A stretch of DNA of 64,000 nucleotides from Macrostomum lignano (GCA_002269645.1 NIVC01000033.1:919335-983334); one strand, 5' to 3'; counted from the stretch's first letter, positions 46,729-51,714 are shown. Translations and numbers: made by a program. Notes: generated by a model from the letters alone, not told the origin.

Positions 46729-49700
46729 ATGAGCAGCTGCTCAAAATCTCCTGACAGGCCAGCTTCAATGGCCGGTCAGCTGGGCGTCTTCGTGAAAAAC
46801 TTCTGCAGCTACACAACTGCTCACGGTTTGGGTCGATTCTCTGAGCAGTCCAGCCTTATTGGCAAGTGCATCTGGGTGGGATTTCTATTGAGCACTTACG
46901 GCGGATTTGCCTACCACCTGTCCACCTTGTTCGAAAGATTTATCCAGGCTCCCGTGCTCACGACGATGAAGTTTTCTACACTGTCGTTCCAGTTCCCGGA
47001 TGTGTACATCTGTCCAACGAGCACAGTAACGATGAGCATGGCAGTCCAGCAGCTGCCGTCTTACCAAATTTACGCGCTAGAGAACTTTCCCAATGTAGCA
47101 ATTGGCACGAAAATCGCTCTGTACAACTTTGAGCTCCTATCTGGGAGGTACGTGGATCCCAGCAAACCCGCTGTTGCATTGGGGAAGGTGCTCCACAGCA
47201 CAGAAGCCGCAATAATGAGCAAACTTCAGTTTTCGGGTAAATTTTCAGACAGTATTTGCATGTACTACTATACTTTGGCAAAGCTGATGCATAAGAAATT
47301 AAAATTTTCAGACACGGCTGAATGTCGAACAACGATCTCAGGAGAGGATTACGTTAGATCTAAGAGCTCAGCTACCATCTATCAGCGCTCAAATATAGCG
47401 CTGGAGTCAGAGAACATCACTGCAATTAAACTTCCGCCACTCAGGTCCCAAGTGCGGTGCATGAATTGGAACGATGCTGCTCGGAAATTGAAACGAAGAA
47501 GTGCTGAAGCACTTGCTGACAAGCTGCTCGCGCTTAACTACTCAAACAGCGAGTCAAGGTGCCGCTCTCCCCCTGGCCTACCTCTGACGGAGTTTTTAAC
47601 CATAGCGAACCGTAAGTGCCAAGCGTTCCAACAAAACATCTACATATTCGGTGAACTTTCAATCCACGCCTTGAATCCCAGGTCCACTACTGAAACTGCT
47701 AGGATGCTATGCTGCAAACTCGACCGGCTTCGAGTTCAGCTTTGCTTGCGGCAACGGCGGGCTGGTCAGCCACGAGGCCTGCGCCGACTGCTGCGGTCTC
47801 CTCGGATACTCGCACATAGGGCTGCAGCCCGGCAGCTGCCTCTGTGGCAATGGCTTTCCCGGCTCGGGCAACAGCAGTAGCGACAGCAGCATCTGCGACA
47901 GCAGCTGCATCAGCAACTGGAAGCAGGCCTGCGGATCGCCGACTGCCATAACCGTGATACAGATTTCGGACACGGGTGGGTTGGTTAAAAGTCCAAAATC
48001 TTTATTCTTAAGCATTATTCTACAAGCTCATTTCCAGACTTTCAGGGTTATTAATCACAATTAGTTAAAAACGTTAAGTATCTAATTTAGAGTTGAAAAC
48101 AGACAGTGGCGCAGGGCCTAAAAGGGTATATTAACAAGGCAATAAATTAGAGGGGGGTTGGGTGCAGAAAAGAAAAGGAGGGGGTGGAATGCGCGACTGT
48201 GGAAAGAGGCGAGACTGAAGAGCCAATCAGAAGACAGCGAGGGAGAGAGAGAGAAAGAGACAAGACCTGAACAAGACAGAGGGAGAGAAAACAAAGTAAA
48301 CAGATACAAGTGCAGACAAACTGAACAAGTGGCTAAGAAAGCCGCGACATTGCCGAATCATTCCGCTTACAGAACCGAAGCCTTTGCAAATCGGAAACTT
48401 CAGCAATCTGACAGTCTTATCTAACGGGCCCTATTGTTTCTTTTTGGATGAGCTTGAAAGACTGAATGCGGCCTTCTGCGACATCCCGTTTTGCCGTAAG
48501 TTTTCGAATTAGGCAAAGTTTTGGCTTTAGCTCTTAAAATCGATAGTGGCGCTCTTTATTGCACTTTAGCTACTTCCAGTGCCTTTGACTGCATAGTAAG
48601 CTCTGATGAAGAGGTCGTTCAAAAGCAGCAGCGAGCAAAGTATACTGGTCGAAAAAATGTCTCCTCTACCGGAAAGCCGTGCTTGCCATGGAGCTCGCTT
48701 GAAGAAAGCCTGTCGAGGCGCTTCTTTTTCGGTTTGTTTGAACTGAACAAGTCATTTTGAATTCTGTCTGAAGGCACTGATATAATCTTTTTGATCTTTT
48801 TTCAGGACCATACAATTTTCTCGGCTTTGACATTCGAACGCCCGACTACAGTGAAAAAGGTGGCGAAAATTTCTGTCGATCAGTCGAAATCATAGCGGAA
48901 GATAGCGTTGAATCCAGAGTACAACGGTATAATATGCGTGCTTTTCTTTAAACAAGACAGGTATATGCATTTGCCTCACCTTAAGTCATACGTACCGCCC
49001 CTCACGTGGTTACTTCAGTCGGTATCCGATTGCTTTTTCTGACACACCTGTGTGCGCCGTGAACACTGGAGCTGCCGTTGCGTTCGCGAACGTTGAGCTT
49101 GAGCCATGCGACATTGCATACTGCTGTAATTATGCCAAATGTTGTAGCTATAGTCGAAGAATAAGAGCGTAATGCAGTCTCAACAACAATAAAATTAACC
49201 GCAATTAAACTCTGCGCCCATAGATTCAGCAGTACCGACTGTAACAGGGGCCATCAGGGACTCGGTCGGGAGCCACCTGCTGGCACGCCAGTTCGGCAGC
49301 GACCTCAGTATCAGCCTTGCGAACTGCAGCTTCGCTGGTCAGAAATGCACCAAGGATGACTTTTTGAACATTGCCCACCCCCAGCTGGGCATGTGCCATC
49401 AGTTTCTCAAGCAGCGTTTCACTGCCAGCATGACCAGCAGGCAACAGGCCCAGAGTCAGCTGTCAATCAAGTACTTTACTGACGCAACCGACTCGAAGGG
49501 ACAGATGGTAGCCAACATGGATCAACTGGCTGGAGTCGTGCACGGCAGCGTGGATTCCGATGCCAGCCGAATTGCATTCAAGGGAAGAATTTTCGCCTAA
49601 ACTTTTCAGGGACCAACTTTTCAGGAAACTGGAAACTGATGGTCCAATAGAAGCTGGGAGACCACAGAGGGGCGCAGCCAGGGGGAGGGCAATGGCACCG

Positions 49701-51714
49701 CGGCCCCATCCCCAGTAAGTTACAGAAATTATGGTGCCCTTTTCCAGCTGACTGGCGCCTCCTTCAAGACAGCTTTAGTGCCCCTCACAATGGGTTGGGC
49801 ACCACCTGTTCCTAATTTTAGCATTACCTTAACAACTACTTTGCCTTTGGCGCCGATGGTACTGGCGCCACTGGTGCTGGCGTCACTGGTGCTGGCGCCC
49901 ACGAAAAGCACGGACCATCAATAATAAATCCTTGCTTCGCTCTGGGACCCCAGAGAACGGAGTAAACGACGAGAAATTATGAACCATGCAAGATTTTCTT
50001 CTCTTTTTAAGTCCACCAAGCTCTCCATATCATTGTCTTCATCTTACAGGCGATAATCGTTCCGGAGAGCAGCTTTCCCTGGCCATCGAAGGGCATCGAC
50101 GTAGCCGCTGCTCAACGCATGGATGTGCAGCTGAGACTCGATAAATTCTCCAAACTCTCCACCGCTCGGAGACCCTGCTCGGAGGTTCCCGAGCCAATTG
50201 TGTACCGGCTACCGTCGTGGAAGCAGGCTGATTCGAACAAGGAATTGGAGTATGTGCGAGAGTGCTCTACCTGCCATTGTAGCAAGCACTGTTTTAAGAA
50301 TACCATTAACTTTTTAATAACACTTCAGCATGAGTACGGGTCTTGAGGCGGTAGTCTCTGCCGCCGATTGGAAACAAAAGCTCGCACACTTTCAAATGAT
50401 GCTGGAAACTCTGAACAGCTCCAGGTTTGTTTAAGAAAAAATGCTTCACAAAGGACAATTTTTTTAAGTTCCATATATTTATTGATTTTCAGAACTTTAA
50501 CTGGAGTAGACAAAGTATTCAGCTACACTGACATGGAGGACTGCATCAACACCTACGTTGTCGAGAAGTTCATCGATAAATGCCGCTGCTTGCCCTCGTT
50601 TTTACCTGTCCGAGCCGATTTCTTTGCAAGACATACTTACTGCTTCGACACCAAAACTATGCCAAATATTTCCACGGAAACCGACTTATGCTTCAGGAAT
50701 CAAGTCGCGAATCTGGTGCAGTACCAGTTCGATGCCGTCAGCCTCTGCAAGGCTGGGTGCTACACAACTGATTTCAGCGCCCGGCACATTACGTATCCGT
50801 GGCCGAATCTGAACAGCTTCCGGTCGCTGGCGTTTTTGAAGAACCTCGCCTTTGCCCTCGGATACGGCAGCAGTCCGAGTGGCCTCAGGGGAATCAACAG
50901 CGTCTACTGCGCCTATTTGAGATCGCTGAACTTCACTCAATCGCCAGCCAGTATGAGGAACCCGCTGGACATTCTCAGCTTCGACAGCGAGCTGACGGCA
51001 CTTCAAAACAGACTTGCCCAGCTAACAGTTCAGGCCTGGACATCGTACGGACAGGAGGTCTCAGAGGAAGAGGCTTATCCCGCCAAGAACCTTCTGGCTG
51101 ACATTGGAGGTTAGATAACAAGTTTGCTAACGAAATTGTTTCCTAGTACTCGTAACTAAATGTTCGATTCGCTTGTACTTGAAAAACTGGCCCAAAGGTT
51201 GTCGTACGATTCACATCCACGAAGGCCAACCCCCAAGGAACCCGGAAGTGTACATGTCTGACGATTAGAAAGTCAAGGCCGCTGTTAATCCCGTGTGAGC
51301 GTGAGGGAGGCTGGTTCAGCGATTCAAGCCAGTGAAAGCTATCCCTAGCCGGACCATTCAAAGCATTGTCGAGTCCAAAGAGGTTTTACTTACGTGCTGT
51401 GGAAAATCTTTTTAAGTAAATTTTATCTGCATAAAAACCAAGAAGTTATCCATACTTTTTGCAAGTAAACCTTCAATTTTACTTCAGGAGCCCTTGGTCT
51501 CTGGTCCGGAATTTCTATTCTGACTGCCTGCGAACTGTTTGAGCTTCTGCTCTACTTTGCACTGGCTGTGGGAGCTCGAATGCGCGAGTGTCGTCAGGCA
51601 GCCACCGGCTCTGCTGGGCACCTGCAAGGACCTGCAGTTTTGAGTAGCGGCAGCAGGCCGACTGTGCGAGCCGACGATGTTGAATTGAAAATTGATGCAG
51701 ACTCCAAGCTGTGA
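46729..51714 (+). CDS. DEG/ENaC (FaNaC/ASIC superfamily) channel with inserted Kringle-like, WSC and Kringle domains (~957 aa)
   Basis: Exons 46729-47236, 47312-47611, 47703-47975, 48570-48731, 48806-48926, 49019-49125, 49224-49582 (donor uncertain, alternative 49507), 50050-50249, 50493-51109, 51488-51714. DEG/ENaC motifs: TTAHG, TM1, FPDVYIC, CSFAGQKC..DF..HPQLGMCHQF, Cys-rich thumb (CINTYVVEKFIDKCRC), LLADIGGALGLWSGISILTACELFE (TM2, GxS filter). Confidence 0.9.

What the first reader, a model, noticed from the sequence alone, without database searches (positions are those of the whole stretch)
46729..51714. DEG/ENaC ion channel carrying a Kringle-WSC-Kringle cassette inside its extracellular finger region
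Seen in sequence: between the post-TM1 FPDVYIC motif and the resumption of ENaC sequence (RQFGSDLSISLANCSFAGQKC), five exons (47312-49125, 963 nt, about 321 aa) encode three modules. These are a degenerate Kringle (ECRTTISGEDY..RCMNW..RCRSPPG..RCY..FAC), a WSC domain (EACADCCGLLGYSHIGLQPGSCLCGN..ICDSSCISNWKQACGS) and a complete six-Cys Kringle (DC..KYTGRKNVSSTGKPCLPW..ENFCRS..PVC..EPCDIAYC). The cassette starts and ends at phase-1 introns, the classic exon-shuffling signature. Established knowledge: the finger is the variable, ligand-sensing part of DEG/ENaCs; Kringle+WSC in tandem is the Kremen ectodomain arrangement; Kringles bind protein partners and WSC domains bind carbohydrates or serve mechanosensors (yeast Wsc1, polycystin-1). 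I know of no described DEG/ENaC with this architecture. Inference: this could be a channel gated or tethered by glycans, extracellular matrix or a protein ligand, i.e. a receptor-channel chimera. The pore (D before GG, GIS filter, HG motif) looks intact.
Basis: partly seen in the sequence, partly recalled or inferred. Interest (0 to 1): 0.92.

Follow-up and report, generated by a model that had tools for sequence, protein, structure and literature searches.

The report
Flatworm sodium channel with nested Kringle/WSC insert
This is an unannotated member of a Macrostomum lignano family of DEG/ENaC ion-channel genes whose outer "finger" carries a sugar-binding-type WSC domain nested inside a Kringle domain, followed by a second Kringle; the design is real, conserved and not described in the papers searched, but this copy has lost one splice site and has no transcript support.

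Summary
The core observation holds. A DEG/ENaC (Pfam ASC) gene on the + strand, 46729-51714, has its extracellular domain interrupted by a cysteine-rich cassette at 47312-49125, bounded by phase-1 introns.

Three details need correcting:
- The cassette has six exons (1107 nt, 369 aa), not five.
- The WSC exon starts at 47682, not 47703.
- The modules are nested, not in a row. Kringle 1 is split between its third and fourth cysteines by a complete WSC domain, and Kringle 2 follows.

The window is Macrostomum lignano (GCA_002269645.1, NIVC01000033.1). About nine paralogue lineages carry the same cassette. Four transcript-derived gene models that I mapped have the same exon plan. UniProt lists them as "WSC domain-containing protein"; no paper found describes them.

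This copy is not annotated, and the GT donor of exon 8 reads GG, so it may be silent or mis-spliced. Its sequence shows no other decay.

The function is inferred only: a binding or tethering antenna on the gating finger.

Verdict: a new variant of a known kind, of moderate interest.

The parts
46729..47236 (+). Exon 1 (508 nt, phase 0 to 1): cytoplasmic N-terminus with the HG motif (TAHGLG), TM1, post-TM1 FPDVYIC and the first ~75 aa of the finger.
   Evidence: ORF and splice model. Pfam ASC. Aligns to ENaC gamma residues 26-112.
47312..47611 (+). Exon 2 (300 nt, phase 1-1): N-terminal two-thirds of Kringle 1, holding Cys1 (ECRTT), Cys2 (RCMNW) and Cys3 (SRCRSPPGLPL), with a ~23-aa insertion in the Cys1-Cys2 loop.
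   Evidence: With the WSC removed, it joins exon 4 to match canonical kringles by hhalign at 98.1% probability, E 1.3e-13. The PDB profile search returned mostly kringle proteins.
47682..47975 (+). Exon 3 (294 nt, phase 1-1): a complete WSC domain with 10 Cys, inserted in the Cys3-Cys4 loop of Kringle 1.
   Evidence: Pfam WSC at 34.7 bits against a threshold of 27.8, covering profile 2-81 of 82. AF2 model of this exon has pLDDT 70. Foldseek top hits are Wsc1 7pz2 (TM 0.66-0.67, probability 1.00) and the Kremen1 WSC. Paralogue alignment supports the 47682 acceptor.
48373..48495 (+).
   Evidence: The homologous 122-123 nt exon exists in four transcript-derived paralogue genes. It aligns to HGF 'GPWCFT..CDIPQC' continuously across the join.
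48570..48731 (+). Exon 5 (162 nt, phase 1-1): Kringle 2 part a, holding Cys1 (FDC), the YTGRKNVSSTGKPC motif and Cys2 (CLPW).
   Evidence: Pfam Kringle below threshold at 18-22 bits. PDB profile hits to prothrombin, tPA and ROR kringles. hhalign 97.3%, E 2.1e-11.
48806..48926 (+). Exon 6 (121 nt, phase 1-2): Kringle 2 part b, holding Cys3 (ENFCRS) and an expanded Cys3-Cys4 loop.
49019..49125 (+). Exon 7 (107 nt, phase 2-1): Kringle 2 part c, holding Cys4 (PVC), Cys5 and Cys6 (EPCDIAYC). This is the end of the cassette.
49224..49582 (+). Exon 8 (359 nt by homology, phase 1 to 0): the ASC domain resumes (ARQFGSDLSISLANCSFAGQKC...). The end of this exon is uncertain.
   Evidence: The exon is the same length (359 nt) in the P0002 and P0005 genes. 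It aligns to ENaC gamma residues 257-290.
49583..49584 (+). The expected splice donor reads GG instead of GT (AAG|GGAAGA). One T-to-G change from the family's GTAAGA type would produce it. Read-through reaches a stop codon at 49598-49600, before TM2. The in-frame cryptic donors (49507, 49534, 49537, 49549) are all weak.
   Evidence: Donor matrix built from 33 family donors: the cryptic sites score -4.9 to 1.0, against a training minimum of 3.5. All four mapped paralogue genes have GT at this position.
50050..50249 (+). Exon 9 (200 nt, phase 0-2): ASC domain (AIIVPESSFPW...).
   Evidence: The paralogue exon is also 200 nt.
50329..50424 (+). Exon 10 (96 nt, phase 2-2): ASC domain.
   Evidence: The paralogue exon is also 96 nt.
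50493..51109 (+). Exon 11 (617 nt, phase 2-1): the Cys-rich part of the ASC extracellular domain, ending in ...NLLADIGG.
   Evidence: The exon is 617 nt in the P0002 gene.
51488..51714 (+). Exon 12 (227 nt including the stop): TM2 with the G-I-S filter (ALGLWSGISILT) and the C-terminus.
   Evidence: It aligns to TM2 of FaNaC, ASIC and ENaC.

Best explanation
**What it is (shown).** The locus is an unannotated paralogue of a Macrostomum lignano DEG/ENaC subfamily. Its 12-exon reading frame encodes a two-TM channel subunit of about 1037 aa if exon 8 is spliced at the homologous position. A 369-aa, 22-cysteine, six-exon cassette interrupts the finger of the extracellular domain.

**How the cassette is built (shown).** It is a three-level nest. 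Inside the ASC domain sits Kringle 1. Inside the Cys3-Cys4 loop of Kringle 1 sits a complete WSC domain encoded by one symmetric phase 1-1 exon. An expanded Kringle 2 follows. The three kringle disulfides (1-6, 2-4, 3-5; textbook pairing) each link a cysteine from before the WSC to one after it, so the two halves must reunite around the insert.

**How it arose (inferred).** Modules with phase-1 boundaries were shuffled into a finger intron, and a WSC exon was inserted into an intron inside the kringle. This happened before the family radiated.

**What it does (inferred, not tested).** The cassette projects from the finger. In ASIC, ENaC and FaNaC the finger is the region that senses stimuli and regulates gating (established knowledge). 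The cassette most likely serves as a binding antenna for a glycan, matrix component or protein partner, and either tethers the channel or modulates its gating. My rough split is 0.3 tether to matrix, 0.3 ligand or glycan modulation, 0.2 purely structural or assembly role, 0.2 something else.

**This copy.** It has lost the canonical GT donor of exon 8 and has no called transcript. It may be silent, mis-spliced or a very young pseudogene, although its coding sequence shows no decay.
For: **Gene model and domains**
- Gene model.
- Pfam ASC is split by the cassette, and WSC scores above threshold.
- AF2 model of the window's own WSC exon matches Wsc1 and the Kremen WSC by Foldseek at TM 0.6-0.67 and probability 1.00.

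**Kringle assignments**
- Kringle 1 with the WSC removed matches canonical kringles over their full length: hhalign 98.1%, E 1.3e-13.
- A profile search of the PDB returns mostly kringle proteins, and the alignment runs across the join.
- Kringle 2 matches at 97.3%, E 2.1e-11.

**Origin and family**
- The window is M. lignano contig NIVC01000033.1.
- About nine paralogue lineages carry the cassette.
- The GenBank models are derived from transcripts (PMC5730564).
- Four of these genes have the same six cassette exons. Three also have the same phases; P0002 differs at one boundary, between the WSC and Kringle 1 C-part exons.
- 21 of 22 cysteines are invariant.
- The window copy has only one unique change at sites invariant in six paralogues, no more than its closest relatives.

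**Position and topology**
- The insertion point lies 29 aa upstream of the C-x-F-x-G-x-x-C segment that aligns to ENaC gamma 257-290. This places it in the finger interval.
- Seven N-glycosylation sequons and a position between TM1 and TM2 fit an extracellular location.
Against: - Pfam Kringle stays below its gathering score (18-22 bits against 34.3).
- The AF2 model of a whole paralogue cassette is of low confidence (pLDDT 61). I could not inspect its coordinates, so the reunion of the two Kringle 1 halves is inferred from sequence and cysteine counts, not seen.
- No transcript evidence exists for this copy. No gene is called at 46729-51714 in the transcript-based annotation, and no hit near 100% identity appeared in the protein search.
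- The exon 8 donor reads GG, and every in-frame cryptic donor is weak.
- dN/dS between the only close pair of paralogues is uninformative, with 15 differences in all.
- There are no functional, expression or ligand data of any kind.
- The canonical kringle lysine-binding residues do not appear conserved on reading the alignment.
- Only the best 150 of 2987 profile hits were visible, so presence outside Macrostomum is not excluded.
Confidence: 0.8

Rival explanations
1. This copy is a non-functional, recently pseudogenised or silent paralogue. The architecture is real in the family, but here the lost exon 8 donor causes read-through to a stop at 49598-49600, or aberrant splicing. The result would be no channel, or a truncated protein lacking TM2.
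For: The donor reads GG where all four mapped paralogues have GT, and the cryptic donors score below every real family donor. No gene is called here in an annotation built only from RNA-seq and transcript assemblies. No hit near 100% identity appeared in the protein database.
Against: All 12 exons are open, and the other ten donors and all eleven acceptors are canonical. There is only one unique substitution at sites that are invariant across the family, the same as in expressed relatives. The annotation also discarded low-expression transcripts and transcripts overlapping repeats. A single-base assembly error cannot be excluded.
Confidence: 0.4
2. One reading: a complete but degenerate Kringle, then a WSC, then a Kringle, encoded in five exons as in the Kremen ectodomain order.
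For: Kremen1 does have a Kringle followed by a WSC, and Kremen structures are among the Foldseek hits.
Against: Exon 2 holds only three cysteines. The missed exon 48373-48495 supplies GPYCFF..C..IPFC, and with the WSC removed the alignment to kringles is continuous over their full length. That exon is conserved in all the paralogue genes. No CUB domain is present.
Confidence: 0.04
3. The cassette exons belong to a separate gene nested in an intron of the channel gene, or the fusion is a gene-prediction artefact.
For: Chimeric models are a common source of false domain architectures (PMC3927609, listed). Some UniProt models of this family are visibly flawed: P0001 has extra N-terminal sequence and an apparent retained intron, and P0007 and P0010 lack pieces.
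Against: Five GenBank models derived from assembled transcripts join the cassette to ASC sequence on both sides. In all four mapped genes the cassette enters and leaves at phase 1, so the frame is kept. The cassette has no start codon with signal peptide, no stop codon, and no separate gene call. The same junctions hold in paralogues as low as 34-36% identical over the shared columns.
Confidence: 0.03
4. The cassette, or only the WSC exon, is an optional, alternatively spliced module. Skipping 47312-49125 yields a conventional channel of 643-668 aa. Skipping only 47682-47975 yields an uninterrupted Kringle 1.
For: Exons 2-5 are each phase 1-1, and exons 6 and 7 together are phase 1-1, so any such skip stays in frame. 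The product without the cassette gives one uninterrupted Pfam ASC match at E 1.4e-40.
Against: No isoform evidence was available. Every transcript-derived paralogue model retains all six exons.
Confidence: 0.15

Closest known systems
Canonical DEG/ENaC channels (ASIC1, ENaC alpha/beta/gamma, FaNaC; Pfam PF00858 ASC)
   Same: Two TM helices, the HG motif, post-TM1 FPxVxxC, a Cys-rich extracellular domain, and a G-x-S filter in TM2 preceded by D-x-G-G. The best PDB sequence matches are FaNaC, ENaC gamma, ASIC5 and ASIC1.
   Different: A 369-aa insertion of mobile modules (Kringle and WSC) in the finger. The family is very divergent from all solved channels, with matches mainly at TM1 and TM2.
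GRIP domain in the ENaC finger (the peripheral, protease-sensitive gating-relief domain)
   Same: A lineage-specific elaboration of the same finger interval. The cassette lies between segments that align to ENaC gamma 26-112 and 257-290. In ENaC this interval regulates gating (established knowledge).
   Different: GRIP is not a shuffled module and works through excision of inhibitory tracts. No furin-type logic was examined or shown here.
[quoted passage not shown]
   Same: A DEG/ENaC subunit combined with a classic mobile extracellular module (PMC10424705). These channels are also uncharacterised in function: they gave no currents in oocytes.
   Different: The module is EGF rather than Kringle or WSC. 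I did not check where the EGF sits relative to the ASC fold, and no nesting is known to me.
Kremen1/2 ectodomain (Kringle-WSC-CUB)
   Same: The only solved protein in the searches that combines a Kringle and a WSC. It matched by Foldseek and weakly by the kringle profile.
   Different: The Kremen domains lie in linear order, with a CUB domain and a single TM helix. Here the WSC is inside the kringle, a second kringle follows, and there is no CUB.
Yeast Wsc1 mechanosensor domain and the polycystin-1 WSC
   Same: The WSC fold. The best structural match of the window's WSC exon is Wsc1 7pz2, at TM 0.66-0.67. Both proteins are linked to surface mechanosensing or carbohydrate contact (established knowledge; PMC9024836, listed).
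   Different: Those proteins are single-pass or multi-pass receptors, not pore-forming DEG/ENaC subunits. No ligand is known for this WSC.
MEC-4/MEC-10 degenerins, with extra Cys-rich extracellular regions and a proposed matrix tether
   Same: DEG/ENaC subunits with enlarged extracellular regions that are thought to couple to extracellular matrix (from my own knowledge, not tested here).
   Different: Their additions are not recognisable Kringle or WSC modules.

Membership tests
DEG/ENaC (Pfam ASC, PF00858) | Significant full-length match to the ASC profile | tested here: met
   E 8.3e-39 in two stretches with the cassette. E 1.4e-40 in one stretch covering profile 1-455 with the cassette removed.
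DEG/ENaC (Pfam ASC, PF00858) | Two TM helices with a pre-TM1 HG motif, post-TM1 FPxVxxC, and a G/S-x-S filter in TM2 | tested here: met
   TAHGLG, FPDVYIC and DIGGALGLWSGISILT can be read in the model. They align to FaNaC and ENaC TM1 and TM2.
DEG/ENaC (Pfam ASC, PF00858) | An mRNA that joins all the exons; a trimeric, amiloride-sensitive cation channel | not testable with these tools
   No transcript is on record for this copy, and the exon 8 donor reads GG. Electrophysiology would be needed.
WSC domain (PF01822) | Profile match above the Pfam gathering score over the whole domain | tested here: met
   28.0 bits in the full protein and 34.7 bits alone, against 27.8, covering profile 2-81 of 82. 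Five of six cassettes match.
WSC domain (PF01822) | WSC fold | tested here: met
   AF2 model of window 47684-47974 has pLDDT 70. Foldseek top seven hits are Wsc1, Kremen1 and the WSC-bearing glyoxal oxidase, at TM 0.59-0.67 and probability 0.99-1.00, although E-values are only 3e-3 to 5e-2.
WSC domain (PF01822) | Carbohydrate or cell-surface polymer binding | not testable with these tools
   A binding assay would be needed.
Kringle (PF00051) | Profile match above the Pfam gathering score (34.3 bits) | tested here: not met
   Kringle 2 scores 18-22 bits. Kringle 1 gives no Pfam hit.
Kringle (PF00051) | Homology to bona fide kringles over the whole domain by profile-profile comparison | tested here: met
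   Kringle 1 (WSC removed): 98.1%, E 1.3e-13, kringle columns 1-89. Kringle 2: 97.3%, E 2.1e-11, columns 8-89. PDB profile hits are mostly kringle proteins for Kringle 1 and, among those shown, all kringle proteins for Kringle 2, though E-values are only 4e-4 and 2e-3. The cassette profile also retrieves multi-kringle proteins.
Kringle (PF00051) | Six cysteines with the CRNP-type Cys3 motif and the PWC-type Cys4 motif; disulfides 1-6, 2-4 and 3-5 | tested here: inconclusive
   Each kringle has six cysteines, invariant in the paralogues. The motifs are SRCRSPPG and GPYCFF in Kringle 1, and ENFCRS and TPVC in Kringle 2. Disulfide pairing cannot be tested here.
Kremen family | Linear Kringle-WSC-CUB ectodomain on a single-pass receptor | tested here: not met
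   No CUB hit. The WSC lies inside the kringle. The host protein is an ASC channel.

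The most novel reading that the evidence does not exclude
The Macrostomum cassette-bearing DEG/ENaCs may be true receptor-channel chimeras. In this reading the nested Kringle(WSC)-Kringle antenna binds a glycan, matrix polymer or protein and passes that binding, or the pull of a tether, through the finger to open or tune the pore. That would make it the first DEG/ENaC gated or anchored through a lectin-type shuffled module. It would also be a natural example of a domain inside a domain inside a domain that still folds.
Probability: 0.2. Interest if true: 0.85.

Novelty: new variant of a known kind. Interest (0 to 1): 0.55.

Why it matters
- **Channel biology.** DEG/ENaC channels are gated by very different stimuli (protons, peptides, proteases, force), all acting through one extracellular fold whose finger is the variable part. 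A subfamily that has grafted recognisable binding modules onto that finger offers a natural experiment in how stimulus specificity is added. It also offers a handle, in the form of a defined module with a testable ligand, on the long-debated idea of channels tethered to matrix.
- **Protein evolution.** A WSC exon inserted between Cys3 and Cys4 of a kringle, itself inserted in the ASC domain, is an unusually clean three-level case of exon shuffling through symmetric phase-1 introns.
- **Annotation.** The result shows that the family is under-described: the kringles fall below Pfam thresholds, and this copy is not annotated at all.

Tried and rejected
- I redid both with paralogue P0002 as the target and the window exons as separate rows.
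- **Failed look-up.** ORF 57014-57442(-) is not on record. I reached the local gene calls through the neighbouring actin gene instead.
- **Whole-cassette AF2 model.** It came out at pLDDT 61. Foldseek found only WSC and Kremen at E about 0.01, and the kringle parts were too poor to use.
- **dN/dS.** The comparison between the 99%-identical pair P0011 and P0155 has only 15 differences (omega about 0.5-0.7) and is uninformative. All other pairs are too divergent for synonymous rates to be usable.
- **Species of the window.** I first took the window for another Macrostomum species because the best hit was 53% identical. I rejected this after an exact look-up placed it on M. lignano NIVC01000033.1.
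- **Shared 156-bp element.** The element shared at 98.7% with locus L001 is not a known RNA by Rfam or a tRNA by ARAGORN. I treat it as a repeat.
- **Literature searches.** WSC plus ENaC, kringle plus amiloride-sensitive channel, the Mlig gene IDs, and finger-domain insertion plus kringle all returned nothing relevant.
- **Cassette-only word-based search.** It found only M. lignano proteins.

Full report
**1. Gene model.**
Three-frame translation of 46600-51800 and hand splicing give a 12-exon gene on the + strand:
- 46729-47236
- 47312-47611
- 47682-47975
- 48373-48495
- 48570-48731
- 48806-48926
- 49019-49125
- 49224-49582 (or a shorter end, see section 6)
- 50050-50249
- 50329-50424
- 50493-51109
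- 51488-51714

All acceptors are AG, and all donors are GT except the homologous donor of exon 8. Pfam finds ASC at E 8e-39, split into two stretches. When the cassette is removed in silico the ASC match becomes one stretch covering profile 1-455 at E 1.4e-40.

**2.
This is a 123-nt, phase 1-1 exon with canonical splice sites that encodes ...NGPYCFFLDELERLNAAFCDIPFC. The paralogue alignment supports 47682, which gives RPLLKLLGCY aligned to SVFRHAGCL, SLLQRVGCF and similar sequences. The cassette is therefore 1107 nt and 369 aa in six exons. Exons 2-5 are phase 1-1, exon 6 is phase 1-2 and exon 7 is phase 2-1.

**3. What the modules are.**
- **WSC.** Pfam WSC scores above its gathering threshold (28.0 bits in the full protein and 34.7 bits alone, against 27.8). 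An AF2 model of the window's own exon 3 has pLDDT 70. Its seven best Foldseek hits in the PDB are the Wsc1 sensor domain, the Kremen1 WSC and a WSC-bearing glyoxal oxidase, at TM 0.59-0.67 and probability 0.99-1.00.
- **Kringle 1.** Exon 2 holds only three cysteines: ECRTT, RCMNW and SRCRSPPGLPL. Exon 4 holds three more: GPYCFF, FC and IPFC.
  - I removed the WSC and joined exon 2 to exon 4 in the window copy and five paralogues.
  - The resulting profile finds mostly kringle proteins in the PDB: HGF at 4e-4, then plasminogen, ROR1/2, prothrombin, tPA, apolipoprotein(a), neurotrypsin and Kremen1. A few talin fusion constructs also appear at E about 0.4-0.5.
  - The alignment runs straight across the join: esrCRsPpglPlGPyCFf..CdvPfC against ENYCRNPRGEEGGPWCFT..CDIPQC.
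  - Against an alignment of ten bona fide kringles taken from the multi-kringle hits P0131 and P0097, hhalign gives 98.1% probability and E 1.3e-13 over kringle columns 1-89.
- **Kringle 2.** Exons 5-7 give 97.3% probability and E 2.1e-11 over columns 8-89. The PDB profile search hits prothrombin, tPA and ROR kringles at 2e-3. Pfam Kringle stays below its threshold, at 18-22 bits against 34.3.
- **Resulting layout.** It reads ASC[ Kringle1-N ( WSC ) Kringle1-C - Kringle2 ]ASC. Kringle disulfides pair 1-6, 2-4 and 3-5 (textbook knowledge). Each bond therefore links the part before the WSC to the part after it, which explains why each half has an odd count of three cysteines. I could not inspect model coordinates, so the folding of the two halves into one kringle is inferred.

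**4. Where the cassette sits.**
A profile of cassette-free sequences aligns at positions 12-100 to human ENaC gamma residues 26-112, which cover TM1 and the first strands. It aligns at positions 201-234 (ltecsfagqkctkddflnvahPqlGvchkf) to gamma 257-290. The cassette enters 29 residues before that second anchor, inside the finger interval. In ENaC that interval holds the GRIP domain, and in FaNaC the peptide site (established knowledge). The cassette lies between TM1 and TM2, and has 22 cysteines and seven N-x-S/T sequons. This fits an extracellular location.

**5. Origin and family.**
- **Source of the window.** An exact look-up of a neighbouring single-exon gene (window 22315-23859, minus strand) places the window on Macrostomum lignano assembly GCA_002269645.1, contig NIVC01000033.1. 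A 21-kb stretch fetched through the neighbouring actin gene is 100% identical to window 42890-64000.
- **Paralogues.** The homologues found are therefore paralogues.
  - Over the full-length query or the whole cassette they are 33-53% identical to the window protein.
  - Over the 579 columns present in all seven aligned sequences they are 34-59% identical.
  - They are P0001, P0002/P0004, P0003/P0005, P0006/P0007/P0010, P0008, P0011/P0155, P0015 and P0094, all from M. lignano.
  - Several are listed by UniProt as 'WSC domain-containing protein' with Pfam WSC+ASC.
- **Wider search.** A HMMER search of 1.84 billion representative proteins with the cassette profile gave 2987 hits. Among the 150 shown, every match to the whole cassette is from M. 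lignano. Most of the others match only the WSC part of the profile and a few only the kringle part; the ones I checked with Pfam are multi-WSC or multi-kringle proteins. Weaker cassette-bearing channels in other taxa could lie below rank 150.
- **Transcript support for the family.** The GenBank annotation of this assembly is built from RNA-seq and transcript assemblies (StringTie, TACO, TransDecoder; PMC5730564). The BOX15_Mlig models are therefore transcript evidence that the cassette is spliced into channel mRNAs.
- **Conserved exon plan.** I mapped four of these genes exon by exon: P0002 in L001, P0008 in L002, P0155 in L007 and P0005 in L003.
  - All four have the same six cassette exons, with a Kringle 1 C-part exon of 122-123 nt.
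  - Three have the same phases. P0002 has a 1-nt shift at the boundary between the WSC and Kringle 1 C-part exons.
  - The ASC exons are of similar size: 200-206, 96 and 614-617 nt where mapped.
- **Constraint.** 21 of the 22 cassette cysteines are invariant.

**6. Status of this copy.**
- **No annotation.** No gene is called between the start of the fetched stretch (window 42890) and the actin gene. No protein near 100% identity exists in the database.
- **Lost donor.**
  - The paralogues end exon 8 exactly 359 or 365 nt in, at ...AFK|GTGAGT, |GTAAGT, |GTAATG or |GTAACA.
  - The window reads TTCAAG|GGAAGA. This is one T-to-G change away from the family's GTAAGA type.
  - Read-through stops six codons later (GRIFA*), before the rest of the ASC domain and TM2.
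  - The in-frame GT sites upstream (49507, 49534, 49537, 49549) score -4.9 to 1.0 on a matrix built from 33 family donors whose minimum is 3.5.
- **No other decay.**
  - All exons are open.
  - The copy has only one unique substitution at sites invariant in six paralogues: G185R, in the kringle Y-x-G motif.
  - That is the same as or fewer than its closest relatives, P0001 with 1 and P0002 with 2.
- **Assessment.** I put about 0.4 on this copy being silent or a very young pseudogene. An assembly error, a low-expression gene filtered out of the annotation, or use of a weak donor remain possible.

**7. Mechanism.**
- **Shown.** The architecture, its conservation, and its extracellular position in the finger.
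- **Inferred.** The cassette acts as a binding module on the part of the fold that senses stimuli and couples to gating in other family members. It could tether the channel to matrix or glycocalyx, or bind a ligand that modulates gating.
- **Lysine binding unlikely.** The WSC domains most similar in structure are a yeast cell-wall sensor domain and the Kremen WSC. The kringles lack the Asp-x-Asp after Cys3 and the Trp residues of lysine-binding kringles, on my reading of the alignment against textbook motifs. Classic lysine binding is therefore unlikely.
- **Not measured.** Nothing on expression, ligands or currents is available.

**8. Comparison with what is known.**
- No paper in the library combines 'WSC domain' with ENaC, or kringle with amiloride-sensitive sodium channel.
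- None cites the five Mlig gene IDs.
- A study of FaNaC relatives expressed three other M. lignano DEG/ENaCs (Mlig049925.g2, Mlig051885.g1 and Mlig041003.g1). In the passages the text searches returned, it does not mention a Kringle or WSC cassette.
- Kremen is the nearest Kringle+WSC protein, but its domains are in linear order and it carries a CUB domain.

**9. Verdict.**
The finding is real and conserved, and it is a new variant of a known kind: a DEG/ENaC with a nested Kringle(WSC)-Kringle finger cassette. I set the interest at 0.55 for four reasons:
- The architecture is already visible, unremarked, in public protein records.
- It is so far confined to one flatworm.
- Its function is unknown.
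- This particular copy may not be expressed.

Noticed in passing
L006 4065-10788 (M. lignano NIVC01000440.1, gene BOX15_Mlig007204g1): The Kringle 2 part b exon of this paralogue is interrupted by an insertion of about 6.7 kb. The insertion has terminal inverted repeats (ACTACG...CGTAGT) and an 8-9 bp target-site duplication, so it looks like a DNA transposon. The annotated CDS bridges it exactly, as if it were an intron.
   Followed up: partly
window 1826-1981, 36322-36602, 51202-51303: Copies of one repeat family that is also present at L001 12303-12642. The first copy is 98.7% identical over 156 bp and the others 75-83%. The third copy lies in intron 11 of the channel gene. There is no Rfam or tRNA match.
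   Followed up: partly
window ~52890-54293 (+): A divergent actin gene (BOX15_Mlig033337g1, 376 aa) lies about 1.2 kb downstream of the channel's stop codon. An 18-bp x 12 tandem repeat at 53061-53275 lies inside it.
   Followed up: partly
window 22312-23859 (-): A single-exon, annotated 515-aa gene. On reading the translation it looks like a leucine-rich-repeat-like ectodomain, a PSTT-repeat stalk and one TM helix. No Pfam hit is on record for it.
   Followed up: no
window 8325-9602: A 51-bp unit repeated 25 times at 97% identity, which mimics long ORFs in four frames.
   Followed up: no
window 13313-14676; 58477-59554; 62359-63685: Three further long tandem arrays: about 1.3 kb of (AGAC)n-like sequence; a purine-rich 38-bp x 28 array that causes the GC-skew spike; and a 23-bp x 58 array. 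The last lies within the span of a 2032-aa gene called on the minus strand from about 61433 onward.
   Followed up: no
window 32969-33445 (-): The ORF ends in ...[22 protein letters not shown]. To me this resembles the TM4 and C-terminus of a Cys-loop ligand-gated ion channel, so it may be the last exon of such a gene. This is from memory and was not tested.
   Followed up: no
proteins P0001, P0003, P0007, P0010 (UniProt models from the older M. lignano assembly): Several family models are visibly flawed. P0001 has about 255 aa of spurious N-terminal sequence and an apparent retained intron inside the WSC linker. P0007 and P0010 lack the Kringle 1 C-part exon. P0003 lacks exons and has a non-homologous C-terminal tail.
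   Followed up: partly
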